Part shown: positions 1 through 48,394 of the stretch, in pieces
Layout of the letters: every line of letters begins with the position of its first letter
Numbering within the stretch: position 1 is the first letter of the stretch
DNA from: Octopus sinensis
Lineage: Eukaryota
Direction of reading: 5' to 3'
Assembly (NCBI RefSeq): GCF_006345805.1
Contig: NC_042998.1
Span: 27,776,001-27,840,000 of the forward strand
DNA length: 64,000 bases
Translations under genes and position numbers: made by a program
The notes under the pieces: generated by a model
Told to the model about the DNA's origin: nothing
Databases searched by the model: none
The model's input: only the letters and a program-made list of their open reading frames with translations

Positions 1-118
1 AGGAGTGTAGAAGTTGTTCTACGCATTTATTATATGACTTCCAATTTAATGCTAGATATAATTACATACAATCTCACATATATAAAAAATTTTTTCTATA
101 TATATATTATTATATATA

Positions 119-157
<39 letters not shown>

Positions 158-342
158 ATAATGATAATATTTTATTCTCCGATCTGAAGCGAAATATTTA
201 AATAGAAATGACTGAAAAATGATGAGCTAACCCCAGCCAGAATCGGACTCACAAATCAACGGTAACAGGGCTCCTTGCACATCTGTTAAATTTAGTTAAT
301 ATGAACTTAAACTGCCTAATATTACAAATAATATGTGTAAAG

Positions 343-470
343 AAACGCGAAAGACTTTGTAAGTTTCGGAGAGAAAGCTACTATGGAAGACTCATTGTAT
401 AATAATATATTTTATTCTATGAGTCTTCCATAGTAACTTTCTCTGCGTAACTTACAGATCTTTCGCGTTT
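343..470. repeat. Inverted repeat (about 52-bp arms, 24-bp spacer), probable decayed Penelope-like end
   Basis: AAACGCGAAAGACTTTGTAAG...GAAGACTCAT (343-394) mirrors ATGAGTCTTCC...CTTTCGCGTTT (419-470), with a few mismatches. Confidence 0.8.
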
Positions 471-494
471 GTTTATAAATATTACACGTCATAT

Positions 495-579
495 GCATGC
501 AACATACATACATACATATATATATATATATACATACATACATATATATATTATTATATATATAATATATACAGTATAA

Positions 580-612
<33 letters not shown>

Positions 613-813
613 CATACAATATAATATATATACATACATCTATATATATATATAACATATATATATATATACACATATATTATATATATATACATACATA
701 TATATATATATAATACACATATATTTATATATAACATACATATATATATATATATATATACATACATATATAATATATATAATACATATATATATATACA
801 TACAATATATATA

Positions 814-854
<41 letters not shown>

Positions 855-1064
855 CATATAATATATATATATATATTACATACATACATATATATATAAT
901 TATACATACATAATATATATATATATATATACATACATATATATACATACCTTATCTATATATATATATATATACTACACTATATATATATATATATATA
1001 CATACATATATATATATACATACATACATATATATAATATTATACACATACATATATATATATT

Positions 1065-1103
<39 letters not shown>

Positions 1104-1623
1104 CATATATATATATATATAATATAATATATACATACATAATAATATATATATATAATATTATACATACATATCATATATATATATATATATATATATA
1201 CATACATATATATCTATATATATATATACATACATATATATATATATCTATATATATATATATACATACATATATTATATATATTATATATATACATACA
1301 TATATATATATATATATAACATACATATTATATATATATATCTATATTACATACTTATATATATATATATATATCTATATTACAACATATATAATATAAT
1401 ATATATATATATATACATATATCTCTATATATATATATATATACATACATATATATATATATATATATACATACATATATATATATATATAATACATACA
1501 TATATATATATATATATACTACACATATATCTATATATATATATATACCATACATATATTATATAGACATAATACATACATACTAATATATATATATATA
1601 CATACATATATATATATATATAT

Positions 1624-1719
<96 letters not shown>

Positions 1720-1880
1720 ATATATATATATATATATATACATACATTATATATATATATATATATACATACCATATATATTATAATATCATATATATAT
1801 ACATAATATTATATATATATATATATATATACTACATACTATATATATATATATATACATAATATATATATATATATAGG
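495..1880. repeat. Compound (TA)n/(CATA)n microsatellite
   Basis: Almost pure TA/TACA repeats; source of the YIYI ORFs. Confidence 0.98.
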
Positions 1881-2544
1881 TGGGTGTGTGTGTGTGTGTT
1901 ACTAAATATATATGCTAATGTATAGGCTTTGTGTATTTTCCAGTGGATGCAAAGGCATAGCGGAGTATATAACTCACATGTCGCCGGTGTGAAAATACCT
2001 TAGAATCTTGGACAGGCGAGATAACTCACCCTCAATCCCGGTTGAGAGTGATGGACATCGTTGTTTTTCAGCATTACGCATCCGCTTGGGTTGAAGGCAA
2101 ATTTTATATATGCAAATTATATCTTTTCAGTCATTTGACTGCAGCTACGCTTGAGCATCGCCTTGAAGAAATTACAGTAGAATGAATCGATCCCAGGACT
2201 TAAACTTTTCGCTAAGCCTCGTACTTATTCTATCGGTTTCTTTCCGCCGAACTGCTAAGTTGGGGGAAGTAAACATCAACAATGGTTGTCAAACACTAGT
2301 GGGGGACAAACAGAAACACAAATACACACACACCCACTATATATATATATATATATATATATGTTATTATATGTATATATATGTATATATATATATATGT
2401 ATATAATATATGTATATATATATTAATATAAGTATATATAATATATGTATATATATATATGTAATAATATTTGTATATATATTTATGTATATTATTTATG
2501 TATATATATAGGTATATATATATATATATGTATAAATATATATG

Positions 2545-4935: not shown

Positions 4936-6590
4936 CCTAGTTCTTCATAATTTGATATATTCAATGTTAGGACTTCCGTATAGAAAAAAGTGTTAGTGCC
5001 ACACAAAACGGTAATGGTGTGTGAATTTTACATTGAAAAATATTCCTCTTCTAACATAAATGAGGCTTACTTTTATAATTCAGTCTTTTTTCTGCATCTG
5101 CCAAATTGTTTGTAGCTTACTCATGGCAAAGGTAATATATATATATTTATATTGGAGCTTTCTTTATACGATTAATGTTCCTAGGACACACGTATAACAA
5201 ACACTGTCAAAATTTTCCTGACAGTTAATTCTTGATCTACCTTTATTCTTATTTTACCTTTATCGATTATTAGTTAAAATAATTGATCTTATAGCCTTAC
5301 ATGCCTTTGAAGCAACCCTTAGTGTCTACTGGAAACACGGGTTTATCCAGATGTTTATTCATTATCTTCGCTGCTAAGTTCTATAAAGTACAGCACCACC
5401 GGTCGTCACTGACGAGTGAATATGACTTGATAGCATGTACCATGCTTTTGCTGATTGTATTCGATGCTTATGTAGTTGGGAGCAAATAAAACCACACGAT
5501 CTAAACCCACTCTCATGAACCAGCGGACATCCAGGATGTGGTAGTTGATAGGATAAAGTTTAACCAGCATCCAGCAGGTAATCAATAAAGCTGAGTGCAT
5601 CGAAGCAACGTGAAAGGAAACGCCTTACTTAAGGACACAACGCACCACCTGTCCAAAACCCGAACCTAAGTCATTATGCCCGTAAGTCCATGGGTCGAAC
5701 ACTCTAAAACTTAACTGCACACCTTAATGGACAAGTTGTAGAAAAGCAGATTATGGGTGAATGCTTTTTAGGGTTTGCCGTTTGAGTAAGATTGGTATTA
5801 AATTTGTGTCCTCCTTAGTGGGTCCATCAGATATTGTTTTAATATTACATGAATCTCTTAATTGCGGCGATCAGGCAGAATCGTTACCGCGGTGAGCAAA
5901 ATGCGTTGCGGTATTTCCTTCGTCTTCACGTTCTGAGATCCAAATCGACTTTACCTTTCATCACTTCAGGATCGATGAAATAATTGCCATTTGAGCACTG
6001 GGATCGATGTAATGGGCTTAACCCTCTACCGAAATTTCTGGCTTTGTGCTAAAAATTGAAACCAATTTTATCTCAGTCTCTTATTAGACCTCTCAGTTAC
6101 CATCTTATGTGCTGTCGTTTATATTTTGTAATCATAATTTTGACCTTTTATAATTTTCTGTTATCTTTCTCTTCTGTAATGTATTGAGATGAACTGAAAT
6201 GAATAGTTTCTTTTATTGCACAAATTGTTACTTTTTATTCAAGCGAATTGGTTGTGGTTTCTTGTGGTCATTTGATTTCTGACATTCTTTCATTTCAATT
6301 CTTGTTTTTATTTTGCTGTATTTGTCTTTGCGTTGTGTATTAATGATTAACAAATATTTTAATTTCACTTTTTTTTGTCTATAGCTGTCTGGTACATAAC
6401 GTTGGCTCAAATCTATAGATGTATTGTGTAGCACAGAATGAAACGGCTAATAAAACAGTAGTTAATTATCTAAATATTTTTCTTCTTTATTTAATATGGA
6501 AAGGTGAACTTTTACTACGGCTTGGCTGGTTTTAGCAGGTCCAGAGTTCAAGTACAATCTCTCTCACTACTTGCACTGTGTTGTTGATTA

Positions 6591-7112
6591 CCGTAAATCC
6601 TCGAGTATAATCCGCATTTTCCCCCCAAAATTTAAAGGTCAAAATCCCTAGTGCGTACTATATACAAGGTTAAAAATGAAAAATATTTTCTAAGCAATGT
6701 CCGTGTCTCTATTTGCTGTCCGGCAATGTTTATTCAGACGCATTTTGTGATGTTGGGCGCGAAAATATCTTAAGCTAAGCCTGATAGCAATGGAGTCATA
6801 AAAGAATCATCCATAACTTGCAGTAAGCAACATTTATTAAAATATAAGTATTCAGAACACAGAATAACATGTAACAAAAACAATTTTAAAACATATTTAC
6901 ATTCCCATATAACAGTTAAGAACATCACCATTATTGTATTACGCATGCACGGAAGTGTTTGTTCGACTAGGTGCTGCTGGCTTAATTACGCACGACTCAA
7001 GTTAGAGAAGGGGTGCGTATTATACACAAGGTTTAGGTTTTTCAGAGGTACAGCCCCATAAAAATCCCATGCGTATTATACTCAAGGGCGGTCTATACTC
7101 GAGGATTTACGG
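6591..7112. mobile_element. Tc1/mariner (pogo/Tigger-like) MITE
   Basis: TIR CCGTAAATCCTCGAGTATA / TATACTCGAGGATTTACGG, flanked by TA on both sides. Confidence 0.9.
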
Positions 7113-17260: not shown

Positions 17261-17987
17261 TATTTCACAGTAATCAACTATGAAATAATTAAGAGTAATT
17301 AATTATGGAGTGGGGGTATTTAAAGTGAAAATGTAAAGGTAAATAATCAAACATCGTAAGAAGATGTCCGGTGGTTATGTCGATTCGTCCATGTAAAACA
17401 ATGAATTTTGGGAAATAATATCGCTTATAAAACATAGTTGAAACAGAAATTGTAAAGCATAATAAATGTTTTGAAAGAGATTACATTTAATTCTATTAAA
17501 GAAGCACTGAAATAGGTTCTAGGAATTTTAAATTTGTTTGCCGTCATAATCCTATAATCTACAACAAGCAGTTATAGAACTTTCGCCGTAGGATACGTGT
17601 TGCACTTTACAACAGAAGTGTTAAGAAATTCTTTAATTTTCCATAAGCAAACTAAACTTTTACGTAGTTCAATTTTCATGATTGAACAGATGTTATGAAA
17701 GGAGTATATCCATTTAAACAACTGAAAAAGAATCTGAAGGAAACAGTGTTTGACTAGAAATGTATTGTTGAAAATGCGAGAAAAAATCAATATTACTTAG
17801 AGGACGAGATTTAGAAAAGGTTGTTTACGATTAGAAGAGAAAGGAGACGATTATCATTTGGAACAGAATATGCCTTTGTCAAAAAATAAACGCAGACCTT
17901 TGGAAGTTCTGGGATAATAAAATGTAATTCCACGAAGACGTAAATACAAATATTTATTTTATGACACTAGAGATACATAGAGGCATT

Positions 17988-18820
17988 AAGGCGGCGAGCT
18001 GGCAGAAACGTTAGCACGCCGGGCGAAATGCGTAGCCGTATTTCGTCTGCCGTTACGTTCTGAGTTCAAATTCCGCCGAGGTCGACTTTGCCTTTCATCC
18101 TTTCGGGGTCGATAAATTAAGTACCAGTGACGCACTGGGGTCGATGTAATCGACTTAGTCCCTTTGTCTGTCCTTGTTTGTCCCCTCTGTATTTAGCCCC
18201 TTGTGGGCAATAAAGAAATAAGAAACGTTAGCATTCCGGGTGAAATGCTTAGCGGTATTTCGTCTGCCGTTACGTTGTGAGTTCAAATTCCGCCGAGGTT
18301 GACTTTGCCTTTTTCATCCTTTCGGGGTCGATTAAATAAGTACCAGTTACGCACTGGAATCGATGTAATCGACTTAATCCGTTTGTCTGTCCTTGTTTAT
18401 CCCCTCTATGTTTAGCCCCTTGTGGGTAGTAAAGAAACAGGTATTTCGCCCGTCGCTACGTTCTGAGCTCAAATTCCACTGAGGTCAACTTTGCCTGTCA
18501 GCCTTTTGGGGTCGATAAATTAAGTACCAGTTACGCACTGGGGTCGACCTAATCGACTTCATCCTTTTGTCTGTCCTTGTTTGTCCCCCCTATGTTTAGC
18601 TCCTTATGGGCAATAAAGAAATAAGAAACGTTAGCATTCCGGGCGAAATGCTTAGCGGCATTTCGTCTGTCTTTACGTTCTGAGTTCAAATTTCACCGAG
18701 GTCGACTTTGCCTTTTCATCATTTCCAGATCGATAAATTAAGTACCAGTTGCGAACTGGGATCGATCTAATCGACTGGCTCCCCCCTCCAAATTTCGGGC
18801 CTTGTGCCTAAGTAGAAAAG
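17988..18820 (+). mobile_element. SINE B/B' nested tandem array (one head, three B' units, terminal B unit)
   Basis: Junctions AAAGAAATAAG|AAACGTTAGC and AAAGAAACAG|GTATTTCG; the last unit ends GGCCTTGTGCCTAAGTAGAAAAG. Confidence 0.9.
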
Positions 18821-21539
18821 AAGATTTGTCTCTAGTGTTTAGAGTGTCCATCTTTACTCTTCCCTCTTTCTGTTTATTTTCAATATTAATCGATCCTTTA
18901 TCCTTGTGATGTTATTTCTAGTGATTTATGTATCAATTAGGCTTAAAATATAAAAAAATTGTTAAGTTGTTTTAGGGTTGATGTAATGACATAGAAAATA
19001 TTAGTGCATGAATATAGAAAGTTATCAATTCCTTATCGAAATGTATGAAAGTGTTCTCATTGGCTATATTTTAGATTAACTAAAGTGCTTGACTTTTAGT
19101 ACGTTTCATCTAGTCAGATTCCACACCGTGATAAAACATCGATAATATTGTTATTTAATTAGTATTAAAGGAGTTAAATGAGAATTCCTTCCCCATCGGT
19201 TATTCACGCAGAGATCAATTGTTAACAGAAATACGTGGATGGCTAGGTTGTCGATTATCATTCATAAGAAATTCTTCTCTTATTTCAAAGAGTATGGAAT
19301 ATGGGGTATTTATGGCAAGGGTGTTGAACAAGGCATAGCTGGTTGAGATAATTACGATTTAAGGTGTGTGTGTGTGGGGTGATCAGGAGACGTTTCCAAT
19401 CGTAAGTGAATTCTGAACACTATGCTGACATTATTTGAGTGATTCAAGTGATACATTGCTAAATGTCTTGCAAACAATTTGCACATGCAAGTGCTACCAG
19501 TCAAAAACTCCGCATATCGGAAGCCAGCAAGTGTATGGGGTCATCAGGAGAGAATGCGTGCCATTTCGGGGCCTACCTCTCGACGGCATCAATTCGCATC
19601 GCCCCCCCCCCCTCACTGATATGAGGCCCCGCAGATCAGCTGGTTATCAAATATAGCTCAATATTCTTCTAGCCATCGCTCATCGTCTCCTTTTAACCAA
19701 ATCCAGTGGCTAGCCTTCTCCACTGTATTTTGGATATCGGAGTTGTAGTGCTAACACTTTGCCGAAGTGAATAAAGCTTTGCTTGAGGAGGTTCAAAAGA
19801 TTCAAGGCGATTCAGACGATTTAAGGAACATTCTTAGCTATACACACACACACACAAAATAAATGAAGCTTCAATAGCATTATCGGAGAAATAGATAATT
19901 GCTTTGAAGCAATTCAAAAAATTTAAAACGAGTCAGAAGATTCAATCAGCCCAGAAACACAATGGTGTTTACTTTATAATGCCTGCTTCTATGAGATTTA
20001 TTACATACGACATGAGTATAACAGATACAGGTATAACAGATCAAATATGCTGAAAATATTGATGATTAAATATGCATAAATGCATACCTCGACTGAATAG
20101 TTACCACGGCCCATGGTCATTTCCTGAAGGCAATATCAAATTGAATCTTAGTGTCAGTCCCCTAAATAACTTTTTGTGAGGAATGATTCCTAAAACTTTT
20201 GTGTTATTCGACATATTGATAGAGTTTCGAAAGACCATTGGCTGCTTAATTATCTGTTTACCGAAGTGATTGGCTTCTATGTTACATTAATTTAACGCTG
20301 TGTTATTTCAGAAAATGATATTTTTGTGTAAAACATCGGATTAAACCAACTCCTTCGGTTCAAGAGTATATTTGGCTTTCATATGAACATGTTATAACGC
20401 TCTTAATATTTTATGTTGTGTCATGAATATTCAATAATTCAGATACCTTAAAAATTATCTTCATCTCTAGGAGATATCTCTGTTAAAACTCTATTAAATG
20501 AAATACTCATTTTCTAAGGAACTTGAATAATGAAGAAAACAATGAACTTTTTATGTTTCAATATTTTCTATTACAAGAGAGGGTTTGTCCCTTCAAGCTT
20601 TGTTTTAACACAGTTCATTTGAACTTCCAGTGAAAATTGATTAATGTAAAATAGAATGTCGCATATCTTGTTACCTTTTGAAAGATTTTTTTATATTTAA
20701 AATTACTCCGAGGAAGCCATTCTCTGTCTTCAGTTAACGATTTTTCTTTTATAACCTTGAGCTCATAAACGTGTTTGTGGATCTTTTCACTGCTCTTTTC
20801 GTTATGATGATGGTTTAACTGTTTGGTAGTTAAGAAGTATAAATCTCATAAAACTTTTCGCATTCACATCCTTCCTTGCATGAAAAAGTTAGCGATTCAA
20901 CAGAACTTTAGATTATAATGTTCAAAGATGGTTTTACATTATCATTAAATGACATTAAGAATAAAGGGCTGTTTAAAATATTTTAATGTACACTGCTCTC
21001 AGTTGTATTGGTTCAAATTTGTTGTAAAATAGTTATTCATGATACCAAAAATAGAAACGATTTGTTGTCTTTTTATCACCGAGAATAAACTAATAAGTGA
21101 AATTTTATACTTCGTTTATCCGTGAGCACGTGCAAACATTCATTTATACTGATTATGTAAAGGTGAATGAAATAAACCTTACCAAATCTAGATATTAAAT
21201 CCTACTAAATCCAGATATTTTAAACTTCTTATTCAGTCGAAAATCCACAACTTAAAAGTGGTGGTCACATCTTATCTTGATTACTGAAATGCAAAGAAAT
21301 GAAACCATGTCCTCAAAACTATTTTGTTTATGGACATTGATTTGATTATATTGATAGAGTTTGTCAATATACTCATAAATAATGGTTCCTATTTTAAGGA
21401 CAGAATCAGTAATTTTGAGGGAAGTGGATTAGTGCATGCCGTTGATCCTGGCACTGTATTTTGTCAAATTTGGAGTGTGAAGGACAAAGTTTACCGCACC
21501 GGGATTTGAACTTAAAACGTAAAGAACCGGAAAGAATGA

Positions 21540-22081
21540 TACACATATCAACAATCGTTTCTACCATTGGTACAAAGCCTGAAAATTTGCGGGAGTCAAT
21601 TACATCGAGCCCAGTGATCGACTGGTACTTGTTTCATCGGGTCCGAAAGGATGAAAGACAATGTCGACCACGATAGAATTTGACCTCTGAACGTGGCGGA
21701 AGACGAAATAGCTATTTTTTTTACTACCCACAAGGGGCTAAACACAGAGAGGACAATCAAGAACAGACAAACTGATTAAGTCGATTACATCGACCCCAGT
21801 GCGTAACTGGTACTTATTTAATCGGCCCCGAAAGGATGAAAGGCAAAGTAGACTTTGGCGGAATTTGAACTCAGAACGTAACGGCAGACGAAATACCTAT
21901 TTCTTTACTACCCACAAGGGGCTAAACACAGAGGGGACAAACAAGGACAGACAAAGGGATTAAGTCGATTACATCGACCCCAGTGCGTAACTGTTACTTA
22001 ATTTATCGACCCCGAAAGGATAAAAGGCAAAGTCGACCTCGACAGAATTTGAACTCAGAACGTAACGGCAGACGAAATACG
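21540..22081 (-). mobile_element. SINE B/B' array, 3' part, interrupted by the LINE
   Basis: About 185-bp units joined at GAAATACCTATTTCTTTACTACCCAC; the head lies at 27403-27459. Confidence 0.85.
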
Positions 22082-22325
22082 AATTTCTTTATGCCCACCG
22101 GGGGCCAAACATAGATATGGACAGTACAACTGATGGGATCAGTGAATCGATATGATTCTACATAAATGTGACATCAAAAATAAAATACAATACATAAAAA
22201 TCGAATGGAATACACAGTACAAAAACAATACAAATGAAGCGATGATCAAGTTACGCTCCGATCCCACAAGCCCCGACCTACCGCTGATACCTTTTTATTT
22301 TTCCTTTTTTTTTTTTCCTCGTCTT

Positions 22326-25300
22326 TCACACGGTTCCTTGCACGCACAACACTCGTGCAACATACTTCCATCTCTTTTGGAACGTACACTCTGACAGACA
22401 CCTCTTCTCCAGCCACAGTTTCCTTTTCAAATGAAAAGAAAAAAAGGATCGTAAATTGTCACCAGAGATAAAGTTGCCTGTCTTAATTCCTTTTATCCTA
22501 GTATTCCATACAGCCTCTTTTGCTATTGCTACAACCGTGAGAAAACAATTCTTACCTTCGTTCGTTAGAACTCCCGGTGGGTCAATTTTTATAATTGACT
22601 CAGTCGACAGCCGTACTCTTCCTTCGCCGGACAACAGATGTTCAGCATAAGCCCACATTTCAGTTATCTCCGGACACTGAACAATAGCGTGAGGGACGGT
22701 TTCCCTGTCCCCACCGCATCTTGGACAGGTCGGCGACTGACGTTTACCATGTCTTGCGAGCTTATCCCAAACGGGCAAGGCACCTCTGTAGCATTGCCAG
22801 GTTGTCCAACGTTCTCAACCCGAATGTACGATGAAACAAGCTGTCCAGTTGAATAAATCCGAGACCTAGAGTCGACCCCAGGCCATCGTCGCATTCAGAC
22901 TCTACCAACCCACTATATAAAATCCGTGTGGAACCCCCACCGCTGGCGTTGCCCGAGCGCCGGAACAGCAAGAGGGCCTTACGGCACTCTTTATGCCACT
23001 CACTCGACCTCGGTCTACGAGAACACCAGGCTTCCTGTTCGCAAAAACTCTTGAACTCAGGGAACATTTGTCTGGCCAGCGGAGACCACACCCGTTCACT
23101 ATCCAGGAGAATCCAGAGGTCCTCAACCTCAACGCATGTCTGCGCATCATTAACCAAGGCATCCCTAAACCTCCATTTAAAGGCTTTTGACAGCAGACAG
23201 AGCGTTTCACAAGTGGCGACCTGCCCTTCCACAAAAAGCGAAAGAGCTGTCTCTCCAACCTGATCAACCACGAATCCGGACAGGGCACGACAGTCAGGCG
23301 GTAGGTAATGACCGATGCGATAAACACATTGGCCACTTCCGCCCTCCCTTTCAGGGATAGCCACCGCCAAGACCAAGTCTTGACTACTGCAGCCACCCTG
23401 CTCAATACCTCCGTCCAGTTCTTCTCTATCTGGAGGCCTGGTCCAAACCAGACTCCCAGCAACTGAACCGGTCCCTCCGTCCAGCGCCTAACAACACTGT
23501 CTGAAGGCATCGACTTGCCAACCCAGGTGCCGAGCTGCAAGCCGACCGACTTTTCCCGGTTAATCTTGCTCCTGCTACCTCCTCGTAAGCCTCAATAGTC
23601 TTACCTACTTCACGTAGGCGTACCACTGTGGTTACACTGATAGTGATATCATCCGCGAAAGCCGTAACAAACTCCTCTAGTCCTGGTTCTCTCGGGATGC
23701 CACTCAACCTTTGCAGTAATGGCTCGAGAGCTATCACATACAAAAGTGGTGAAAGCGGACATCCTTGACGAACCGAGCGTCTGATGCAGAACGGCTTCGA
23801 AAGGAAACCGTTCACCCGAACTATCGAGTCAATGTTGTGGTACAAAGCGATAAACCACCCGAGGAAGCCAAGGCCCAGGCCAAACCGGCGCAAGTACAGT
23901 CGCTAGGTATCGATGGTCAACCCTATCAAAAGCTTTAGACTGGTCCAAATGCACCAATGCCCCACCTTTGCCAGATTTATTACCAAACCTCTCTATGGTA
24001 TAGCGAATAAGATGGAGGGTATCCTGAATGGTTCTGCCTGGGATGGCACATGTCTGTGCCTCCCCGACTATACCATTCGCGACACGCGCCAACCTTTTTG
24101 CTAGAACCTTGGCCAAAATCTTCACTTCTGCGTTTAACAGAGTGATGGGCCTGAAATTCTCTAGAACGTCCCCCTTGTCCGGGTCCTTTCTGACCAACGT
24201 CACTACTCCCCGGCGCACAGATCTGGGGATAAACCATTCTGTTTCCAGTTCGCGTACACGTCAGTCAGTAGTTGCCCGAACAAGTCTGGCATACATTTAT
24301 ACAGCTCGTACGGAAGACCATCAAGTCCCGGTGACTTACCCGCTTTACAATCGGCCAAAGCCTCCATCACCTCCTCAAGTGTGATTGGCCCTTCGCAAGA
24401 CTCCGCATCCGACCCCGAGAGGCACGGCAGCCCGGTAAGAAAGTCCTCGAGGGCTCCCACCCACCAGGACCGCCGTCACCCCCGAACAGCTGGGCGAAGT
24501 ACTCCCGAAAGACCTCACACATTTTCTCGGGTTCGTTTATCAAGACACCATTTTGATTCGTCAAAGACCGAATAGAGGAACTATTTCCTTGCCGAGCTTC
24601 CACCACTCGGGCCCATCCAGCGGCTTTGATTCCTTCACTTCCCATTGCACGTAACTTAGCTCTGGTAATACTTCCCATGTGGTGGGCTTCAAGATGCTGG
24701 TTTAACTCCAGTCTTTTCACCTCGCTTGGTCTGTATTACCAGTCCTTCAGGCTTCTTCTAGTTCCTTAACTAGACCATCTCCTATTTTACGTCCCTTCTT
24801 AGCTAAACTTATGCTAAACCTAATAGACTCATATTTGATGGCTCTTTTTAGGCGTACCACCATTTGTTATTAATGATGGTACCTGTTAATGCCCTCTGTA
24901 TTAACATCTTGATCCGCTTTCTGTACTCCTCAATCGCCAAAAGGGACGTATTGAGTTTCCAGTAGCCAGATCCCTGTCTATGCAACTTATCTACCGTCAG
25001 TTTACAGGTAACCATCTTGTGGTCACTGTAGCTGACTAGAAAAAACTGTGGACACTCAACTATGGACTTATCTTTTTCTCTAATTAAAATCCTATCTAGA
25101 TATGTTCTGGTAGACCCGTCACTATTTGACCACGTCCACTGTGGAGTGTTCGGGTGCTCCAACCTATATGGATCTGCTAGCTGAAATTGACTTAGCAGAT
25201 CCCGAAAGCCTCTGTTACATTTTCTGTTCATGTTCGAGTTTGAGCCAACACAATCTGTGTGTGCTGCACATATTGTATTAGAGTCTCCTAACACTACTAG

Positions 25301-25707
25301 TGAATGCGACGTGGCTAGGAACTTCCTAGGCCACGAAAATATTCAGTTTGCGGGCCAATAATGTTTGGTGCATAAATAGCGACCAGCCTGATTGTCTTGC
25401 CACAACTGAATGTCAAGTCGAGAACGACCAGCCTGCCTTCTGGGTCAGAAAAAACCAACTTTTTCTCGGCTACCCGGTTTCTTTTTAGTAGGACCAACAC
25501 CCCACCCCCACCTCCCGCCCGACTCGGAGAAACGTATTTCTCGTAGCCGTTCAGGAGGGGGAGCAGATCTCTTGGCCCCTTCACCCGGGTTTCCGTTGCA
25601 ACAATTACATCCAAATTTCTCGACCTGATGTCATTCAGAAAGCGTCCTTGCTTCCAGCTTGACAACAGGCCATGAACATTTAAACAACCAATGTGAATAG
25701 CCATCAC
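22326..25707 (-). pseudogene. LINE ORF2: apurinic endonuclease + reverse transcriptase + C-terminal Cys motif, frameshifted
   Basis: Motifs IGCLNVHGL, ATET, LGDSN, YLDRILI, SDHKMV; KSPGLDGLPYE, FRPITLLN, LDQSKAFDRVDH, SVRQGCPLSPLLY, AFADD, WLSLKGR, CPRCG..ETVPHAIVQC, spread over at least 8 ORF pieces. Confidence 0.95.
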
Positions 25708-25831
25708 TTACCTGTTTAATTAGGATTGTCCGGTGGAGGGGGACCCTCCACCTTTTTTTTATCCAGGGTCGGAGGTGGACGGTCTGGGAAATAGATTGTC
25801 AAAATCCCGTCTCACCACCGACACAGAATTA

Positions 25832-27230
25832 TCAGGTGGAGGGGGAATCTCCACCTTTTCCTTTTCTCGCGGGATCGGAGCTGGTAATCCATGAAATATC
25901 GACGTTGTTAAAATCTAATCTCAATGAAGATACAGTCTTTCTGTACTTATTTTGTAGAATTCTATAAGTCTTATTTGAGACTTCATATATGTCGTAATTG
26001 ATAAATTCCTCTGAAAGGTTATCAATTTTTTTTACAGTTATGAGTTGAATGTCTCTCATGAGCTCAGTATCTTTAGTGTATACGGCTATTATGCCTTTTT
26101 CTCTTTTTATCTCTGGCAGTCTTTTTTGGTCGTTGTTCTGTAGTAGTCGCCGCTCTCGGCTGGGTTGCTGGCTGTATTTTTCTTTTGTTTGTTGTTTTTT
26201 CTCATCTGTTTCTTCTTTATCTTCTTCCTCTTTGTCTTTTTTCTCCTCTTCCTCCTCTTCTTCATTTTCCTTGCAGTTCCTTCGAATGTGGCCTAATTGA
26301 CCACATAAAAAACATCGAGGTTTTCGGCCCTCAACAAACACCACGAGGTTCTCCTCCCCTACCTCAATTGTCTCAGGAATTGTTTGAATTATTTTAGGGC
26401 CCGCTTGAATGAGAAGATTAATTGTTTTACCATCCCAGCGTGGGTTTTCCGTAGCGGTAGCCTGGAGGAGAGTAATTTTTTCTACCTCTTTGATTAGGAC
26501 TGCCGCCAACAACACATATGGTTCGACCCTGGCGGGACCCTTGTAATTTTTATTCGCGACGTCCTCATCCCCATATAATAGGGTATTAACTCCACGTCGT
26601 TCGTTTTCAACGTTTCCACTGAGTTCTTGTGTGCTATTTCTTTATTGGTGAACCTTACTTCCACCGTTCCGAATTTTTTTCCTCTTCTCAGAAATACTAC
26701 GTCGCCAATATTGGCTTTAAGCACTTTTCTATTTTCTCTTCTGACATTCTTTCAATTTTTCTATTTGTAGACAATATGTTTTGAAAATTATTGTTTTTTG
26801 CTTTTCTTCCTGTAATAACTTTTGCGGAGGTTCAATTTTCACACTGTTGTCATTTATTTCATCATTTTGCTGTATTTCATAATTTCGCTTTTATTCGTCG
26901 ACAGTATCTGGGTTCCACCCCCAGCAGCCAACGCAAAACTTTTTTCCATTTTTTGGTTCTATCTGGATGCTAGGCACATCAATTATTCTCTTCGACACAA
27001 TGCCTTTGTTCTCTGGCAAAGTCGGAAACTCTTCTGGTGAAAGTTCTGACGAGCTCTCAGACACATCTCCAAAAATATCAAATATATTTCCTCTTGCTAT
27101 TCCTTCTTGTAGCGGAGGAAACCCCTATTTCCTTGTCTGTAGTTGGCCCCTCGCCGGACATGTATTTCCTCCTCTCAACAGGAGAAACAAGTATTTCTGC
27201 TCCAACGGTAGGCTCCATGCTAGACGACAT
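25832..27230 (-). pseudogene. LINE ORF1 (gag-like, zinc knuckle), frameshifted
   Basis: RCFLCGQLGHIRRNC followed by an E/K-rich stretch; pieces 25832-26515 and 26494-26724. The start at ATG 27230 is tentative. Confidence 0.8.
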
Positions 27231-27402
27231 TCTTCCCCCCAAAGGGGGAATGAACAACGCGTGCTACCACAAGCACTAAGTGTTTTCAATTGAAAACTCC
27301 AACAGTTAAGTTATTCAACAGTTTAACAAGAAACAACAGTTGTTAACAATATTAACACCACGAAACAGCAATTCTTACTTCACGAACACATGCGCGGCAG
27401 CT

Positions 27403-27459
27403 GAAATACGGCTACGCATTTCGCCCGACGTGCTAACGATTTTGCCAGCTCGCCGCCTT
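27403..27459 (-). mobile_element. SINE B head upstream of the LINE (remainder of the target SINE)
   Basis: AAGGCGGCGAGCTGGCAAAATCGTTAGCACGTCGGGCGAAATGCGTAGCCGTATTTC on the minus strand. Confidence 0.9.
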
Positions 27460-28269
27460 AATACACATAAAGAAATTTAAGGTGGTGATCTGGCAGAATC
27501 GTTAGCACGCCGGGAAAAATGCTTAACGGCATTTCATGTGTGTACGTTCTGAGTTCAAATTCCGCCGAGATCAGCTTTACCCTTTAGCCTTTGGCGCACT
27601 GGGGTTGATGTAATCGACTTACCCACTTCTTCCAACTTGCTATCCTTTTGCCAAAATTTGAAACCAATAATGAAGAAATTTCTACATATGTAAACCACAT
27701 GTCGTATATGTAATGAAGTAAATGAAATCTCAAAGAATTTTGCAAAATATTACATATGAAAATATTTGAAAATATTTGAACGGTATACTTTTACCCAAAA
27801 TACCGAATACTCGAAAAGATATCACGAATAACTTATTGGAATCTCGGCGATTTAATGATAAATATTTAAAATATGATGATCATTGAAATAAAGCCAGCTT
27901 GTATTTTGATCTATCGTATAATATTGAATCTACGAGCGGCTCATTCATTGGAACACTTTACTCGAGCTACTGACTCCTTATGCTTTTGAAGCTTTTAATA
28001 TTTGAAGAAAAATCATGACTCTGCATATATGAATAATATATAAAAGTGAAACGAAGCCGATTGGTGTCTGGTACGTAATTTATCTGCGTATAAGTTTTAA
28101 AAAATGGATAAGTGGTCTGCATTGTTAGGAACCTACGTCACATGTGTCAGTAGTTTGAATAATGGAGGTCATTGCAAAACCGTGTATGTATTCACAGGAA
28201 CATCTATGATCTAATGATTAAGAGAACATCTTTGCTACAGTGAATATATTGCTTAAGATATAAAATTAC

Positions 28270-33117: not shown

Positions 33118-33648
33118 CAGGCGGCGAGCTGGCAGAAACGTTCGCATGCCGGGCGAAATACTAAGCGGTTGCCTTTCATCCTATCGGGGTCGATTAAATA
33201 AGTACCAGTTATGCACTGGGGTCGATGTAATCGACTTAATCCGTTTGTCTGTCCTTGTTTGTCCTCTGTTTAGCCCCTTGTGGGTAGTAAAGAAATAGGT
33301 ATTTCGTCTGTCTTTACGTTTTGAGCTCAAATTCTGCCGAGGTCGACTTTGCCTTTCATTCTTTCGGGGTCTATAAATTAAGTACCAGATATTCACTGGG
33401 GTCGATGTAATCGACTTAATCCGTTTGTCTGTCCTTGTTTGTCCTCTGTTTGTTTAGCCCCTTGTGTGTCGTAAAGAAATAGGTATTTCGTCTGTCTTTA
33501 CGTTTTGAGCTCAAATTCCGCCGAGGTCGACTTTGCCTTTCATTCTTTCGGGGTCTATGAATCAAGTACCAGTTGCGTACTGGGGCGGATCTAATCGACT
33601 GGCCCCCTCCTCCAAAATTTCGGGCCTTGTGTCTAGAGTAGAAAAGAA
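33118..33648 (+). mobile_element. SINE B/B' tandem array
   Basis: Two AAAGAAATAG|GTATTTCGTC junctions, then the terminal B end GTCTAGAGTAGAAAAG. Confidence 0.88.
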
Positions 33649-44035: not shown

Positions 44036-44528
44036 CCACTAACATAACTAAATTCTTGAGTTGTTTTTCTGAAGTTCACTTTGTTGCAAGTATTTGAACT
44101 CCCAATACTTTCATTCGTTTCAAGTGCAATTAGATAACCTTTGCGAAAATGTCATGCGTACTTCTGTTCCTCTGACTAAGCTTCTGCAGCATCAAAGCAA
44201 ATTAAGACTTGTAATAAGGTTTAGATTAGACAGTTCGATCTTTTTTGATTCGTTAAATTTGTAAATGCCATCCACAAAATTTCGTTCTACAATTATCACT
44301 ACCAATTATTAAACTTAATTACAATTCCGAAGCTAATCAAATATATATTCTTTTCTACTCTCGGCACAAGGCCCGAAATTTTGGAGGAGGGGGCCAGTCG
44401 ATTACATCTACCCCAGTACGCAACTAGTACTTAATTTATCGACCCCGAAAGGATGAAAGGTAAAGTCGACTACGGCGGAATTTGAACTCAGAACATAAAG
44501 ACAAACGAAATATCGCTAAGCATTTCAC

Positions 44529-46026
44529 AATTATTTTTTCCCACAAGGGGACAAAAAAGACATATCAGTACAATCTGTATGGAGTCAGATTTATTGTATG
44601 AGTTAACAAAAAGGTGAATTTAAAAATTTTACATTAATATGAATAGTTCGAATGATATCATATACAAGACAACAATACAGAATGGATTGGGGAGGCGAGA
44701 TATGTTCGAACCACACGAGCATCGTCTCACCACTGATGTTTCGGGTTCGTCCTGCGTTGTATTCATGTGGTTCCATCCATACGCAACATTCGTGTGACAT
44801 TCTTCCATAGATCTTGGAACATTTTCGCGGACAGGCATTTTTCTCTAATCCTATTTTCCTTCTTAGGTGGAATGTGAAGAAATTCACCAAGCCAGGGCCA
44901 CACTTTCATTTGCGTCTTCCAAATCACCTCTCTCGCAATTGCTACTACACCGAGAAAACAATTCGAAACTTCTTTCGATAGGAAATCCGGTGGATCAATT
45001 TTTACTATTGACTCAGTCGATAGCTGTACTCTTCCTGTACTTGAAAACAGTTATTTGGCATAAACCCACAGATCTGACACCTCCGAACACTGAACAATAG
45101 CGTGCGGGAGGTTTTTCCTGTCCCGTCCACATCTTGGACAGGTCGGAGGCCCATGGCCACCATGCCTTGCGAGCTTGTCCCTGACAGGTAAGGCTCCTCG
45201 GTAGCATTGCCATGTCAAAGACTTCTGGAAGTTATCCAGCATCTTCGGCCCGAATTGGAACAGACTGGCCAGCTGATTATCATCGAGACCTAGGGATTCC
45301 CCCAAGGTATCGTCACATTTCGCCTCTACAAACCCTCTATAGAAGAATGTGGTAGAACCACTACCGCACGCATTTCCCGAAAGATGGAATATCCGGAGAG
45401 CCTTATTACACTCCGTAAACTATGTACCCAACTTCGATCTACGATAGAATCAGGTATCCAGTCCACCGAAACAAGTGAACTTGGGAAACATCTGTTTCTC
45501 CAGCGGAGACGATATCCGATTATCATCTAGATGGAGCGACAGTTGCCTCAACCTCAGCGCGTGCCTGCGCATCATCAGCCAAGGCATCCCTAGCCCACCC
45601 TTTAACAGTTACTGGCTGCAAATAGAACGTCCCACAAGGGGATTCGAGCCCTTCCACAAGAAGCTGAAGAGCTGTCTTTCCAGCTTGCTCAACCACGAAT
45701 CAGGGCAGGGAACGACGGTTAGGCGGTAGGTGATGACCGATGCGATGAACACATTCGCCTCTTGCGCCCTCCCTTTCAGGGATAGCCACCGTATAGACCA
45801 GGTCTTGGCTACGTGGGCCACCCTGCTCGCTACCTCGAACCAGTTCTTCTTTATTTGAAGGCCTGGTCCAAACCAGACTCCTAGCAATTTAAACGCGGTC
45901 AGGAGGCATCGACTTGCCTCTCCAGGTGCCGAGCTGCGAGCCGACCGACTTTTCACGATAAACCTTTGCTCCTGCCACCGTCTCGTATTCCAAGAATACA
46001 CCACAGAATTAATCACACGTAACAAA
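44529..46026 (-). mobile_element. 5'-truncated, decayed Tx1-like LINE inside a SINE B
   Basis: KTWSIRWLSLKGRAQEANVFIASVITYRLTVVPCPDSW and PTCPRCGRD match the LINE at 22082-27402. Probable 17-bp TSD ATCGCTAAGCATTTCAC (44512-44528) / ACCGCTAAGCATTTCGC (46027-46043). SINE body 44350-44528, head about 46027-46080; about 45 bp of unassigned filler at the 5' junction. Confidence 0.88.
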
Positions 46027-46804
46027 ACCGCTAAGCATTTCGCCCGGCGCGTTAAAGTTTCTGCCAGCTCGCTGCCATTAATCAAATATATATTCCTGTC
46101 TACTCTAGGCACAACTTTTTGGGGAGGGGGGCATCAATCAAATATATATTTAACAAGAAATATCAATGAAGCAAAGGGGTTTTTGGTGATATTTGATTTT
46201 CAAGCCATGCCTTCACCTTGGATGTGTTGCTAAGAGAAAGTTTTTCGCAGAATTTATTTCACTTGTCATCAAACTTTATTCCTGAATCAGGCCAGCAATT
46301 GAATTTCTAAACATTGTTTCTCAATTCCTTAGCTCAAGAATATAATCGGTTGAGTATTGCCAAGAATATCGATAGAAACATTTATTGATAACACATCCAC
46401 GGATGAGAAAATATTAAAAAAATTGATCATAACTATAAAGTCATCTCAGCAAAAATATATAGTTTTGTTGTACAATTTGGGAGATAAAAGTTATGAGAAA
46501 CATGTTTACTGGATTTTGAAAACCAGCAGGTAACTTATCCATTATCAGTATTATTTTTTTAAAGTCTATCTGAACGTTATTAATTCAAAGAGTGAAATAA
46601 AGTTTATATCCCGAGGAAAAACAGAGAAGCCAAAGGTTTCGAGTAGAAACCTTAGAGAACAGAAATGTCAGCTGGTGGAGGCAACAAAAATTAGCGAATG
46701 AAATGTGCAACTGTCAGAGCAAAAACTAAATAGAAAGAACGATAGCAGATTTGAAAAATATTGAAAGAAAGAGGCCACTACAGGGAAATATTATTTATAC
46801 AAAT

Positions 46805-46824
46805 ATGTGTGTGTGCATACAAAC

Positions 46825-46897
<73 letters not shown>

Positions 46898-47077
46898 TAT
46901 TACATATATATACACATAAATATATATACATATATATACATACATATATATATACATACATATATATATGCATACATATATATACACATATATATATATT
47001 CATACATATATATATATATGCATACATATATATATATATGCATACATATATATATACATACATATATATATACATAC

Positions 47078-47128
<51 letters not shown>

Positions 47129-47130
47129 GT
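46805..47130. repeat. (TA)n/(CATA)n microsatellite
   Basis: Seen directly. Confidence 0.97.
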
Positions 47131-48394
47131 AAAAATGGTGGCTAATCTCAAAGAAAAGGATGCAAAAGAGGAAAAACAATCAATAGTAAATATATTCATA
47201 ATATATGCAGATTGGTTTGATTCTGTCTTGTCAAACTAACGTAACGGAGAAACAACGTAAAGAATATTTAGCAGACACATTTGGAAAAAATACACAGTTA
47301 AATATCGAACATATAGTGAAGTGGAAGGGGGGGATGAACGTTCTTATTGAGGTTCTTCTACTGATAGTATAATTTATTTGTTAATATGACCTATGTATAT
47401 AACTGAGCGGGAAGTAAAAAAGAAAGCAGAGTAAGTAGTTACTGTGGAGCATAAAATAATATGTAGAAAGGCGCAGAGAGGAAGGTGACAATTATTGAAA
47501 ATAAGAAGGAGAGGAGAAAATGTTAGAGTAGTAATTATTGTTTAGAAGAAATGATTATTTTAAGGGATTATAATCTGAAAAAATATAAACGCAGAGGTCT
47601 AGTGAGATCTTTGGTTAAGAACTGAGAACAATTGCTCAATTAAAACCCCATTTTGGCCGTTTCAGTCGCGTATAGCAACTTAACATAGTGGTAGGTTATT
47701 CGTGGCTTAGTGAATTTCTGACGGCGTGTTCTGTCCTTGAGCATGACGCTTTTATTTCACGTTGTTCCAGTCCACTCAGCTGGTAAAAAATGAGTAGTAC
47801 TTGCATTTCAAAGAGGCAGCCTTGTCACACTCTGTGTTATGCTGAATCTCCCTGAGAACTACGTTAAGGATACGTGTGTCTGTGGAGTGCTCAGTCACTT
47901 GCAAGTTAATTTCACGAGCGGGCTATTCCGTTGATCGGATCGGCTGAAACCATAGTCATCACAACTGTTAATTTGGACAAGTTCGAAAGAAATGAGAAAA
48001 TGTTTCGTTCCACCCTACCTCCAAATGAGAATGGGAGACCAGTGACTTTGGAGGTAAAATTAAGCTAAAACCTGGTGTCTGAATCTCCGATGACGTCATT
48101 CGGTGCAAGCTGTGTCGTTAACACAAAAGTCTCCAAAGATATTCTTCGACAAAATCCGATAAGCGCTATTTTATGTTTGTAAATACATTATAAATGATAT
48201 TTTATCAAATGCAGCTTCGTGTAGAATTAATGACAGAATTTTGATAGTTCTTTCTAAAATAGGCAAATATTGGGGAAAGAATGAAGGGTAGAGGTAGCCT
48301 TGGTGGGATTTGACCTCAGAATGTAACAAATCAGAAGTATAGCAAGGCTAACGTTCAAACGATTCTGAAATTCCAAATATTTTAGTAATCCTTT

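What the first reader, a model, noticed from the sequence alone, without database searches (positions are those of the whole stretch)
22082..22115. LINE and SINE B' share a 3' stem-loop tail with a compensatory change
Seen (RNA sense): LINE1 GCCC-CCGGU-GGGC..AUAAAGAAAU; LINE2 (44539-44551) UCCC-CUUGU-GGGA..AAAAUAAU; SINE B' GCCC-CUUGU-GGGC/U..UAAAGAAAU. The closing pair covaries G-C to U-A. Known: stringent LINEs recognise a 3' stem-loop and partner SINEs borrow that tail, whereas mammalian L1 relies on poly(A). Inference: B' is a Tx1-mobilised SINE made by grafting the LINE tail onto the LINE's own target.
Basis: partly seen in the sequence, partly recalled or inferred. Interest (0 to 1): 0.7.

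Follow-up and report, generated by a model that had tools for sequence, protein, structure and literature searches.

The report
LINE and SINE share 3' hairpin
The flagged bases are the 3' end of a decayed L1/Tx1-type LINE in a cephalopod-like genome, and its small terminal RNA hairpin is also carried by a companion SINE, which is the classic way a SINE borrows a LINE's copying enzyme; this is a well-supported new example of a known mechanism.

Summary
Window 22082-22115 (minus strand) is the extreme 3' end of a 5.3-kb frameshifted LINE (27394-22082) bounded by a 16-bp target-site duplication. A second, 5'-truncated copy (46027-44529) has its own 16-bp duplication, so the tails belong to the LINEs and are not neighbouring SINE remnants. 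The last 34 nt of LINE1 match the SINE B' tail (0 of 1000 shuffles score as well).

The same 4-bp GC hairpin with a 5-nt loop (mostly CUUGU) ends LINE and SINE copies in Argonauta hians. It also ends seven sister LINE lineages, one of them from a cuttlefish, and the window's SINE B. Across 14 lineages, 96% of cells pair, three of the four pairs show double compensatory changes, and no shuffle or slid control comes close.

The best explanation is a stringent-type LINE/SINE partnership in which the LINE reverse transcriptase recognises the hairpin. That recognition is inferred, not shown. The LINE belongs to the L1/Tx1 superfamily and looks Tx1-like (CCHC-type ORF1, zf-RVT), but clade membership is not proven.

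Both LINE copies and 13 of 19 B' tails sit at hot spots inside SINE heads, against 0 of 9 B tails, so a shared target preference is plausible. B' is best read as a tail swap. Verdict: new member of a known kind.

The parts
22082..27394 (-). LINE1: about 5.3-kb L1/Tx1-superfamily non-LTR retrotransposon, many frameshifts, apparently full length
   Evidence: ORF pieces hit zf-CCHC (25832-26515), Exo_endo_phos (25315-25707), RVT_1 (23426-24218) and zf-RVT (22326-22778). tblastn with cephalopod ORF2 proteins covers 25704-22329. Ends are defined by the TSD.
22082..22115 (-). The finding: LINE1 3' tail, homologous to the SINE B' tail
   Evidence: Local alignment to the B' tail scores 36, against 14.2 +/- 2.1 for shuffles; 0 of 1000 reach it.
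22093..22105 (-). LINE1 terminal hairpin GCCC-ccggu-GGGC, followed by the trailer AUAAAGAAAUU (22092-22082)
   Evidence: Sequence; predicted in the MFE fold; covariation across lineages.
27395..27410 (-). 5' copy of the LINE1 target-site duplication (cgtatttcagctgccg)
   Evidence: the SINE head upstream of LINE1 runs to head position 65.
22066..22081 (-). 3' copy of the LINE1 target-site duplication (cgtatttcgtctgccg); 14 of 16 bases identical to the 5' copy
   Evidence: the SINE resumes at head position 50/51.
27395..27459 (-). 5' part (tRNA-like head) of the B'-type SINE that LINE1 split
   Evidence: BLAST to the head consensus, positions 1-65, 89% identity.
21898..22081 (-). Rest of the split B' SINE; its tail hairpin GCCC-cuugu-GGGU is at 21922-21910 and the trailer AGUAAAGAAAUA runs to 21898
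21712..21897 (-). Next B' unit; starts at head position about 50 and has its hairpin at 21738-21726
21553..21711 (-). Last unit of the array: an older SINE with a third tail type and a decayed hairpin (AGGCtttgtACCA, 21580-21568)
44529..46027 (-). LINE2: 5'-truncated copy of a related subfamily, 73% identical to LINE1 over 1.1 kb
   Evidence: zf-RVT at 45051-45305.
44539..44551 (-). LINE2 terminal hairpin UCCC-cuugu-GGGA, followed by the trailer AAAAAUAAUU to 44529
46028..46043 (-). 5' copy of the LINE2 target-site duplication (gcgaaatgcttagcgg), inside a SINE head
44513..44528 (-). 3' copy of the LINE2 target-site duplication (gtgaaatgcttagcga)
   Evidence: The host SINE itself is flanked by its own 15-bp duplication 'atatatatttgatta' (46093-46079 and 44348-44334), so head and remainder are one SINE split by LINE2.
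44362..44374 (-). Tail hairpin of the B-type host SINE (GGGC-cuugu-GCCG in this copy; family consensus GGGC/GCCU)
   Evidence: The B tail matches L003/L091-type LINE tails.

Best explanation
Bases 22082-22115 are the 3' terminus of a dead L1/Tx1-superfamily LINE.

The terminus is a 4-bp G+C hairpin with a 5-nt loop (consensus C-N-N-G-U, mostly CUUGU). A short A-rich trailer follows it (A[R]UAAAGAAAU), and there is no poly(A).

The same module ends the Pol III-type SINE subfamily B'. A sister version of the module ends SINE B.

The most likely function is stringent-type template recognition. The LINE's ORF2 protein would bind the hairpin of its own RNA and start target-primed reverse transcription within the trailer. 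B' RNA, carrying a copy of the tail, would be mobilised in trans.

What is shown:
- the tail is part of the LINE;
- it is shared with the SINE;
- the hairpin is maintained by compensatory evolution across octopod, cuttlefish and unassigned marine LINE lineages.

What is inferred:
- that the reverse transcriptase is what reads the hairpin;
- that B' depends on this LINE.

A secondary claim with medium confidence: this LINE lineage and B' integrate preferentially into a roughly 35-nt stretch of tRNA-like SINE heads, and this builds head-to-tail SINE arrays.
For: 1. TSDs. 16-bp duplications directly flank ORF-to-tail in LINE1 and LINE2. The host SINE of LINE2 has its own outer 15-bp duplication.

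2. Window tail sharing. LINE1 tail versus B' tail: 0 of 1000 shuffles score as well.

3. Argonauta hians. Two LINE copies end in ...cugugucAGCCagguGGCUaagaaagaaau and ...cugugucGGCCcuuguGGCUaauaaagaaau. Their 3' UTRs align up to this point and then diverge. Argonauta SINEs carry the same tail: score 61 against 15.3 +/- 2.3, 0 of 1000 shuffles.

4. Sister LINEs at about 40% ORF2 identity end with homologous hairpins:
- L003/L091: AGGC-cuugu-GCCU
- L005: UGGC-caugu-GCCA
- L087: UGAC-cuugu-GUCA
- L090: CGGC-uugac-GCCG
- cuttlefish L092 and L094: (C)GGC-cuugu-GCC(A)

5. SINE B's tail matches the L003/L091 type: score 41 and 37, 0 of 1000 shuffles each. It does not match LINE1, and B' does not match L003.

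6. Covariation. 14 lineages, 96.4% of cells paired, 3 of 4 pairs with double changes, 0 of 500 shuffles, slid controls at most 48%.

7. Enzyme. The LINE has the needed domains: endonuclease, RT and zf-RVT.

8. Target preference. Both LINE copies lie in SINE heads. 13 of 19 B' tails abut internal head positions 17, 29 or 46-50, against 0 of 9 B tails (Fisher p = 0.0008; p = 0.007 counting loci).
Against: - No experiment here links the hairpin to RT binding.
- The hairpin is tiny, and single-sequence folding is not better than shuffles for LINE1, LINE2 or B'.
- The outer pair is C·A in two lineages.
- Both window LINE copies are old and broken, and neither tail equals the B' consensus (LINE1's loop is ccggu; LINE2's trailer differs). 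The actual B' driver was therefore not seen.
- Sister LINEs end in AAUAAA, so a role in 3'-end formation cannot be excluded.
- More distant relatives (25-31% identity) lack the motif.
- For target preference, there are only two LINE copies, and B' arrays could have grown partly by unequal crossing-over or by copying of composite units. Tail variant 'caat' goes with site 17 and 'tagt' mostly with site 50.
Confidence: 0.75

Rival explanations
1. The tails are not LINE sequence. On this reading each LINE merely sits next to a B' remnant, or is a chimeric retrocopy that started on a B' RNA.
For: Both LINE copies lie inside SINE-rich arrays, and a B' unit follows LINE1 directly.
Against: - 16-bp TSDs abut the tail on the 3' side and the LINE 5' end on the other side, in both copies.
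- The LINE1 and LINE2 tails differ from B' and from each other.
- Argonauta LINE copies and seven sister LINE lineages in SINE-free flanks end the same way.
Confidence: 0.03
2. The hairpin is conserved for RNA 3'-end formation or stability (polyadenylation context, termination, protection from exonucleases). It is not a reverse-transcriptase recognition element, and the SINE shares it for the same reason.
For: Sister LINEs end ...hairpin-hairpin-AAUAAA, and Argonauta tails contain AAUAAAG. No protein-binding evidence is available.
Against: - Genomic copies end at or a few nt after the trailer and have no poly(A). Reverse transcription therefore starts at a defined internal site, as in stringent-type LINEs.
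- A Pol III SINE has no use for a Pol II poly(A) context, yet each SINE keeps the stem and loop of its own LINE lineage.
Confidence: 0.12
3. The head-to-tail SINE arrays and the position of the LINEs reflect unequal crossing-over or amplification of composite master copies. On this reading there is no integration preference of the LINE machinery for SINE heads.
For: - Units within one array can be near-identical; units 2 and 3 at 33169-33600 share body variants.
- Tail variant correlates with junction type.
- No internal TSDs are visible for the B' units.
Against: - LINE1 and LINE2, which share no homology with the SINE, are inserted with clean 16-bp TSDs about 15 nt apart in the same stretch of the head and in the same orientation.
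- Eight separate loci with different host types (B-tailed and third-type-tailed) carry such junctions.
- B tails never do (0 of 9).
Confidence: 0.3
4. The 4-bp palindrome is a chance feature of a conserved primary sequence and has no RNA structure.
For: The stem is short, and folding energies are not significant.
Against: The stem sequence is the variable part while pairing is kept. Pair 2 is C-G or G-C; pair 3 is C-G, G-C or A-U; pair 1 is G-C, G-U, A-U, U-A or C-G. The loop and trailer are the conserved parts. 0 of 500 shuffles match, and slid registers fail.
Confidence: 0.02

Closest known systems
UnaL2 / UnaSINE1 of eel and ZfL2 of zebrafish (L2 clade; Kajikawa & Okada 2002; PMC4176376)
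   Same: LINE and partner SINE share a 3' tail made of a small conserved stem-loop plus a short terminal repeat. There is no poly(A), and recognition is of the stringent type.
   Different: The clade differs (L2, against the L1/Tx1 superfamily here). The stem, loop and trailer sequences are unrelated. Function was shown by retrotransposition and binding assays there and is only inferred here.
Stringent-type L1-clade LINEs with partner SINEs in maize/sorghum and in Chlamydomonas (Ohshima 2012/2013; PMC3472496, PMC3747384)
   Same: L1-superfamily elements whose 3' end is a stem-loop supported by compensatory mutations, with conserved loop and 3'-flank nucleotides, shared with SINEs.
   Different: Those are plant and algal lineages with a different motif (loop UCU, flank CGAG). 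No target preference for the SINE itself was reported.
Tx1-Mar LINEs and SINEU of crocodilians (Kojima 2015; PMC4494074)
   Same: A Tx1-type LINE and a SINE are linked by a shared preference for inserting into one transposon family at a few hot spots.
   Different: SINEU has poly(A) tails, and no LINE sharing its 3' terminus was found. The target is a Mariner DNA transposon. Here the pair shares a structured tail, and the preferred target is the SINE family's own tRNA-like head.
Tx1L / Tx1D of Xenopus and other target-specific Tx1-group elements (Keno, Kibi, Koshi; Kojima & Fujiwara 2004, as cited in PMC4494074)
   Same: L1-group elements with an AP endonuclease that land in specific repeats. 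Some relatives prefer (TTTC)n, which resembles the GAAA-rich trailer seen here.
   Different: Membership of the Tx1 clade is not established here. The specificity here is a preference (6 of 19 B' tails lie elsewhere), not strict.
Human L1 / Alu
   Same: Same enzyme superfamily: human ORF2p is the best solved relative (E = 9e-63). The SINE is mobilised in trans.
   Different: L1/Alu rely on poly(A) (relaxed type). The element here has a hairpin tail, no poly(A), and a CCHC-type ORF1 rather than Transposase_22.

Membership tests
Stringent-type LINE/SINE partner pair (shared 3' tail) | The SINE 3' end is homologous to the 3' end of a LINE in the same genome | tested here: met
   LINE1 tail versus B' tail: score 36, 0 of 1000 shuffles. 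Argonauta LINE versus Argonauta SINE: score 61, 0 of 1000.
Stringent-type LINE/SINE partner pair (shared 3' tail) | The shared segment is the true terminus of the LINE (abuts the TSD, no poly(A)) | tested here: met
   16-bp TSDs start right after ...AAAGAAAUU (LINE1) and ...AAAUAAUU (LINE2).
Stringent-type LINE/SINE partner pair (shared 3' tail) | A conserved stem-loop in the tail, supported by compensatory changes | tested here: met
   14 lineages, 96.4% paired, 3 of 4 pairs with changes on both sides, 0 of 500 shuffles.
Stringent-type LINE/SINE partner pair (shared 3' tail) | The tail is required for retrotransposition and is bound by the LINE protein | not testable with these tools
   Needs a retrotransposition reporter and RNA-binding assays.
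Stringent-type LINE/SINE partner pair (shared 3' tail) | Concurrent activity of an intact LINE with exactly the SINE's tail | tested here: inconclusive
   Both window LINE copies are broken and differ from the B' consensus in loop or trailer. Only one 64-kb window of this genome was available.
Tx1 clade of the L1 group of non-LTR retrotransposons | N-terminal AP-type endonuclease + RT + C-terminal CCHC (zf-RVT) in ORF2 | tested here: met
   Pfam Exo_endo_phos, RVT_1 and zf-RVT on LINE1 pieces and on relatives P0004 and P0001. Human L1 ORF2p is the best PDB match.
Tx1 clade of the L1 group of non-LTR retrotransposons | Type I ORF1 (CCHC zinc knuckle) rather than the Transposase_22 ORF1 of vertebrate L1 | tested here: met
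   zf-CCHC in LINE1 ORF1 at 25832-26515 and in the L091 ORF1, with no Transposase_22 hit. PMC5203782 states that such ORF1s in animals are consistent with Tx1.
Tx1 clade of the L1 group of non-LTR retrotransposons | The RT domain falls inside the Tx1 clade in a phylogeny with curated references (RTclass1/Repbase) | tested here: inconclusive
   In an NJ tree of 110 RT domains the cephalopod clade sits on the side of a fish protein named 'Transposon TX1...' (P0096) and of frog proteins. It is far from P0098, which carries Transposase_22. No bona fide Tx1 or Repbase references were available, and there is no bootstrap.
Tx1 clade of the L1 group of non-LTR retrotransposons | Sequence-specific or strongly preferred target | tested here: inconclusive
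   2 of 2 LINE copies lie about 15 nt apart in SINE heads in the same orientation. 13 of 19 B' tails are at head positions 17/29/46-50 against 0 of 9 B tails. The sample is small, and array growth by recombination is not excluded.
tRNA-derived SINE (SINE2), reported for octopus as tRNA-Deu / tRNA-Core (PMC8967140) | tRNA-like head with A and B boxes | tested here: inconclusive
   The head contains a B-box-like GAGTTCAAATTCC. ARAGORN calls no tRNA and Rfam gives no tRNA hit in 17800-28000. The Deu-domain resemblance rests on memory only.

The most novel reading that the evidence does not exclude
A Tx1-like LINE lineage of coleoid cephalopods uses an ancient 3' hairpin (4 bp, loop CUUGU) as its template signal. 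That would make it the first structured-tail, stringent-type LINE/SINE pair in the Tx1 group. In addition, the LINE and its SINE B' both home to the anticodon-arm-like stretch of the SINE family's own tRNA-like head, so the SINE builds tandem arrays by landing in its own relatives.
Probability: 0.4. Interest if true: 0.55.

Novelty: new member of a known kind. Interest (0 to 1): 0.4.

Why it matters
- It names the likely LINE partners of two abundant octopod SINE subfamilies: B' goes with the LINE1 type, and B goes with a sister lineage. I found no such assignment in the papers searched; the octopus TE papers read (PMC9115989, PMC8967140, PMC12988792) do not give one.
- It adds an animal example of stringent, hairpin-based template recognition inside the L1/Tx1 superfamily, whose best-known member (mammalian L1) reads only poly(A).
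- The motif is small and covaries cleanly, so it is directly testable with stem-swap mutants.
- If the preference for SINE heads holds genome-wide, it would explain the SINE multimers in octopus genomes and give a second case, after SINEU/Tx1-Mar, of a SINE inheriting its LINE's target choice.

Tried and rejected
- Single-sequence folding: the hairpin appears in most LINE tails, but the energies are not significant, so I did not use them as evidence.
- Rfam: no family covers the tail. The only hits were sub-threshold miRNA-like matches to a head-to-head SINE pair.
- ARAGORN: no tRNA found.
- Metagenome scan with an ORF2 profile: 80 loci at 23-37% identity, none with the hairpin downstream of ORF2. 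They were uninformative for the tail and show only that the motif is restricted to closer relatives.
- L001, L088 and L093: the contigs end before the LINE 3' end.
- Homology between LINE1/LINE2 and B' upstream of the last 34 nt looked plausible by eye ('tgtactgtcc', 'aatcgact'). It is not significant against shuffles, so I dropped it.
- Microhomology-guided priming as the cause of the hot spots. Sites 17 and 36 begin AGAAAC/CGAAAU, like the trailer. Site 50 (GGTATTTCG) is not complementary to the primer that would be needed, and the trailer is not merged at the junctions. This remains unresolved.
- MAFFT misplaced the 4-nt-loop Argonauta copy (AGCC-aggu-GGCU) in alignment A2. I left it out of the counts rather than hand-editing it.
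- Literature: no paper found assigns LINE partners to octopus SINEs.

Full report
WHAT IS AT THE COORDINATES

The window looks like a cephalopod genome. It has about 35% GC, 10% of it is one SINE family, and the nearest protein relatives of its LINE come from Argonauta hians and a cuttlefish. Everything relevant lies on the minus strand.

Read in RNA sense, 22115-22082 is ucuauguuugGCCCccgguGGGCauaaagaaauu.
- LINE2: UCCCcuuguGGGA at 44551-44539, then aaaaauaauu.
- B': GCCCcuuguGGGU at 21922-21910, then aguaaagaaaua.

THE TAILS BELONG TO LINES

LINE1 spans 27394-22082. Its 5' flank is a SINE head that runs to head position 65 (27459-27395). Its 3' flank resumes the SINE at head position 50/51. 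The 16-nt overlap, cgtatttcNNctgccg (27410-27395 and 22081-66, 14 of 16 identical), is a target-site duplication.

LINE2 (46027-44529) is 5'-truncated and 73% identical to LINE1 over 1.1 kb. It is flanked by gYgaaatgcttagcgR (46043-46028 and 44528-13). The SINE it split has its own outer 15-bp duplication, atatatatttgatta.

The hairpin and trailer are therefore the last bases of each inserted LINE, not a neighbouring B' remnant.

LINE TYPE

The LINE1 reading frames are broken. The pieces still hit the following Pfam families:
- zf-CCHC, in ORF1
- Exo_endo_phos
- RVT_1
- zf-RVT

An intact relative, P0004, matches human L1 ORF2p over endonuclease plus RT with E = 9e-63. In an NJ tree of 110 RT domains the cephalopod clade falls on the side of a fish protein named 'Transposon TX1...' and of frog proteins. 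It is far from an L1 that carries a Transposase_22 ORF1.

A CCHC-type ORF1 in an animal L1-group element is described as consistent with Tx1 (PMC5203782). L1-Tx1 elements are reported in coleoids (PMC8967140).

I conclude that the element belongs to the L1/Tx1 superfamily and looks Tx1-like. Clade membership is not proven, because no curated references could be included.

THE SINES

Full copies have a tRNA-like head (ggcggcgagctggcagaaacgttagc...gagttcaaattccgcc), a shared body ending ...aatcgact, and one of two main tails:
- B: ggccccctcctccaaaatttcGGGCcttgtGCCTagagtagaaaagaata
- B': taatccgtttgtctgtccttgtttgtcccctctgtgtttaGCCCcttgtGGGTagtaaagaaata

LINE1's last 34 nt align to the B' tail with score 36, against 14.2 +/- 2.1 for shuffles (0 of 1000). 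Similarity further upstream is not significant.

EVIDENCE FROM OUTSIDE THE WINDOW

Argonauta hians (locus L002):
- Two LINE copies have 3' UTRs that align up to ...ctgtgtcAGCCaggtGGCTaagaaagaaat and ...ctgtgtcGGCCcttgtGGCTaataaagaaat. They diverge immediately afterwards.
- Argonauta SINEs end ...GGCCcttgtGGCTaa(t/c)agagaaatcta. The LINE-to-SINE alignment scores 61 against 15.3 +/- 2.3.

Sister LINE lineages at about 40% ORF2 identity. These are intact two-ORF elements from marine and cephalopod-derived assemblies, plus the cuttlefish Acanthosepion pharaonis. Each ends with a C-rich tract, a homologous hairpin, a second AU-rich hairpin and AAUAAA:

| Locus | Hairpin |
|---|---|
| L003/L091 | AGGC-cuugu-GCCU |
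| L005 | UGGC-caugu-GCCA |
| L087 | UGAC-cuugu-GUCA |
| L090 | CGGC-uugac-GCCG |
| L092 (cuttlefish), L094 | (C)GGC-cuugu-GCC(A) |

The window's SINE B tail matches the L003/L091 type (scores 41 and 37, 0 of 1000 shuffles each). L003 does not match B', and LINE1 does not match B. So two SINE subfamilies with one head and body carry the tails of two sister LINE lineages.

COVARIATION

On an alignment of 14 lineages with the 4-bp helix specified (the 10-lineage version is):
- 54 of 56 cells form standard pairs.
- The innermost pair is always C-G.
- The next pair is G-C (7), C-G (6) or A-U (1).
- The next pair is G-C (10) or C-G (4).
- The closing pair is G-U, U-A, A-U, G-C or C-G, with C·A in two lineages.
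- The covariation score is 0.78 against 0.17 +/- 0.06, with 0 of 500 shuffles reaching it or the percentage paired.
- Sliding the 3' partner by 1-3 columns drops pairing to 25-48%.

The stem sequence varies while pairing is kept, and the loop (C-N-N-G-U) and trailer are conserved.

Caveats:
- The lineages are related, so cells are not independent events. I estimate about five independent compensatory events.
- Folding energies of single tails are not significant.
- Relatives at 25-31% identity lack the motif.
- Rfam has no such family.

TARGET PREFERENCE

LINE1 and LINE2 inserted about 15 nt apart, in the same orientation, within the head stretch ...GGGCGAAATGCTTAGCGGTATTTCGTCTGCCG.

Of 19 B' tails in the window, 13 are followed within 7 nt by a SINE that starts at an internal head position:

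| Head position | B' tails |
|---|---|
| 17 | 3 |
| 29 | 1 |
| 46-50 | 9 |

None of 9 B tails is followed this way (Fisher p = 0.0008). Counting loci, it is 8 of 14 against 0 of 9 (p = 0.007).

This gives head-to-tail arrays whose last unit carries an older tail type. Examples are 18037-18776, 21553-22081, 33169-33600 and 58863-59191.

The simplest reading is that the LINE1-type machinery prefers this part of SINE heads. For B', the 5' junction would be resolved through homology with the host head, which would explain why no internal TSDs are seen.

Unequal crossing-over or copying of composite masters may contribute. Within-array unit similarity and the link between tail variant and junction type both point that way. 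I could not explain the choice of site 50 by primer-tail complementarity.

MECHANISM: SHOWN AND INFERRED

Shown:
- LINE identity
- TSDs
- tail sharing
- lineage-specific LINE/SINE tail pairing
- compensatory maintenance of the hairpin
- absence of poly(A)
- clustering of insertions in SINE heads

Inferred from established knowledge of stringent-type LINEs (Kajikawa & Okada 2002; PMC4176376; PMC3747384):
- ORF2p recognises the hairpin.
- Target-primed reverse transcription starts in the trailer. The trailer sometimes appears duplicated (aaagaaatagaaata at 48555 and 52025), as expected of terminal-repeat slippage.
- B' Pol III transcripts are mobilised in trans.

- Borrowing of a LINE stem-loop tail by the SINE: supported.
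- 'Tx1-mobilised': plausible, not proven.
- 'Made by grafting the LINE tail onto the LINE's own target': only partly supported. The SINE family is the preferred target, but the graft point of B' is the body/tail boundary, not the hot spots. B already has the sister lineage's tail at that same boundary, so a tail exchange (template switch or recombination) on an existing SINE is the simpler origin.

COMPARISON AND NOVELTY

LINE/SINE tail sharing with a covarying stem-loop is textbook for the L2, CR1 and RTE clades. It has also been described for plant and algal L1-clade elements (PMC3472496).

A Tx1-SINE link through shared target preference is known for SINEU. Those SINEs have poly(A) tails, and no LINE with the same terminus was found (PMC4494074).

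The present case combines both features in cephalopods, and I did not find it described in the papers searched. I rate it a new member of a known kind: moderately interesting for transposon biology, and readily testable.

LIMITS

- Only one 64-kb window of the source genome and two old LINE copies were available.
- Several outside loci come from unassigned marine assemblies.
- No reference-based clade assignment was possible.
- There is no functional evidence.

Noticed in passing
window 27395-27572: Two SINE heads lie head-to-head (minus strand 27459-27395, plus strand 27479-27572). They are separated by 'tacacataaagaaattt' (27462-27478, plus strand), which resembles a LINE1-type trailer without a hairpin. 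The inverted pair gives sub-threshold miRNA-like Rfam hits (MIR8675, 40.9 bits against a gathering score of 90.8).
   Followed up: partly
window 33169-33600: Three-unit SINE array. Unit 2 has a B-type head and body almost identical to unit 3, but carries a B' tail. It is a chimeric unit, which suggests homology-mediated resolution or unequal crossing-over.
   Followed up: partly
window 18037-18776: Four-unit SINE array that alternates the two B' tail variants ('caat' joined at head position 17, 'tagt' joined at position 50) and ends in a B tail.
   Followed up: partly
window 21926-21938 and other B' copies: The B' tail contains a degenerate, non-pairing near-duplicate of its hairpin region (tttgTCCCctctGTGT) just 5' of the real hairpin. 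LINE2's tail aligns best to this duplicate.
   Followed up: no
L003/L004 (ERZ21867824 ctg88761c) and L005/L006 (ERZ25071366 ctg14421c): Intact sister LINEs are arranged head-to-tail every 6.8 kb, with identical ORF2 proteins. The contigs carry a 'c' suffix, which I read as the assembler's mark for circular (my reading of the naming, not checked). These may be tandem LINE arrays, circular DNA or an assembly artefact.
   Followed up: no
L003 7159-7185, L091 6632-6655, L005 7079-7105, L087 about 6585-6610, L092 about 5596-5625: Sister LINEs have a second, AU-rich hairpin between the GC hairpin and a terminal AAUAAA. The LINE1-type and SINE tails lack it.
   Followed up: partly
window 1-2000; 46751-47145; 49458-49977: A very AT-rich stretch (15% GC) at the window start, and TA/TATA-type microsatellites downstream of LINE2 (ORF translations read YIYIYI).
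   Followed up: no
window 48555-48582, 52025-52052, 63407-63434: Three B' copies end aaagaaatagaaat(a)gg, a duplicated AGAAAT unit. This is consistent with terminal-repeat slippage. At 63407 it coincides with an 8-bp TSD, AGAAATGG.
   Followed up: partly
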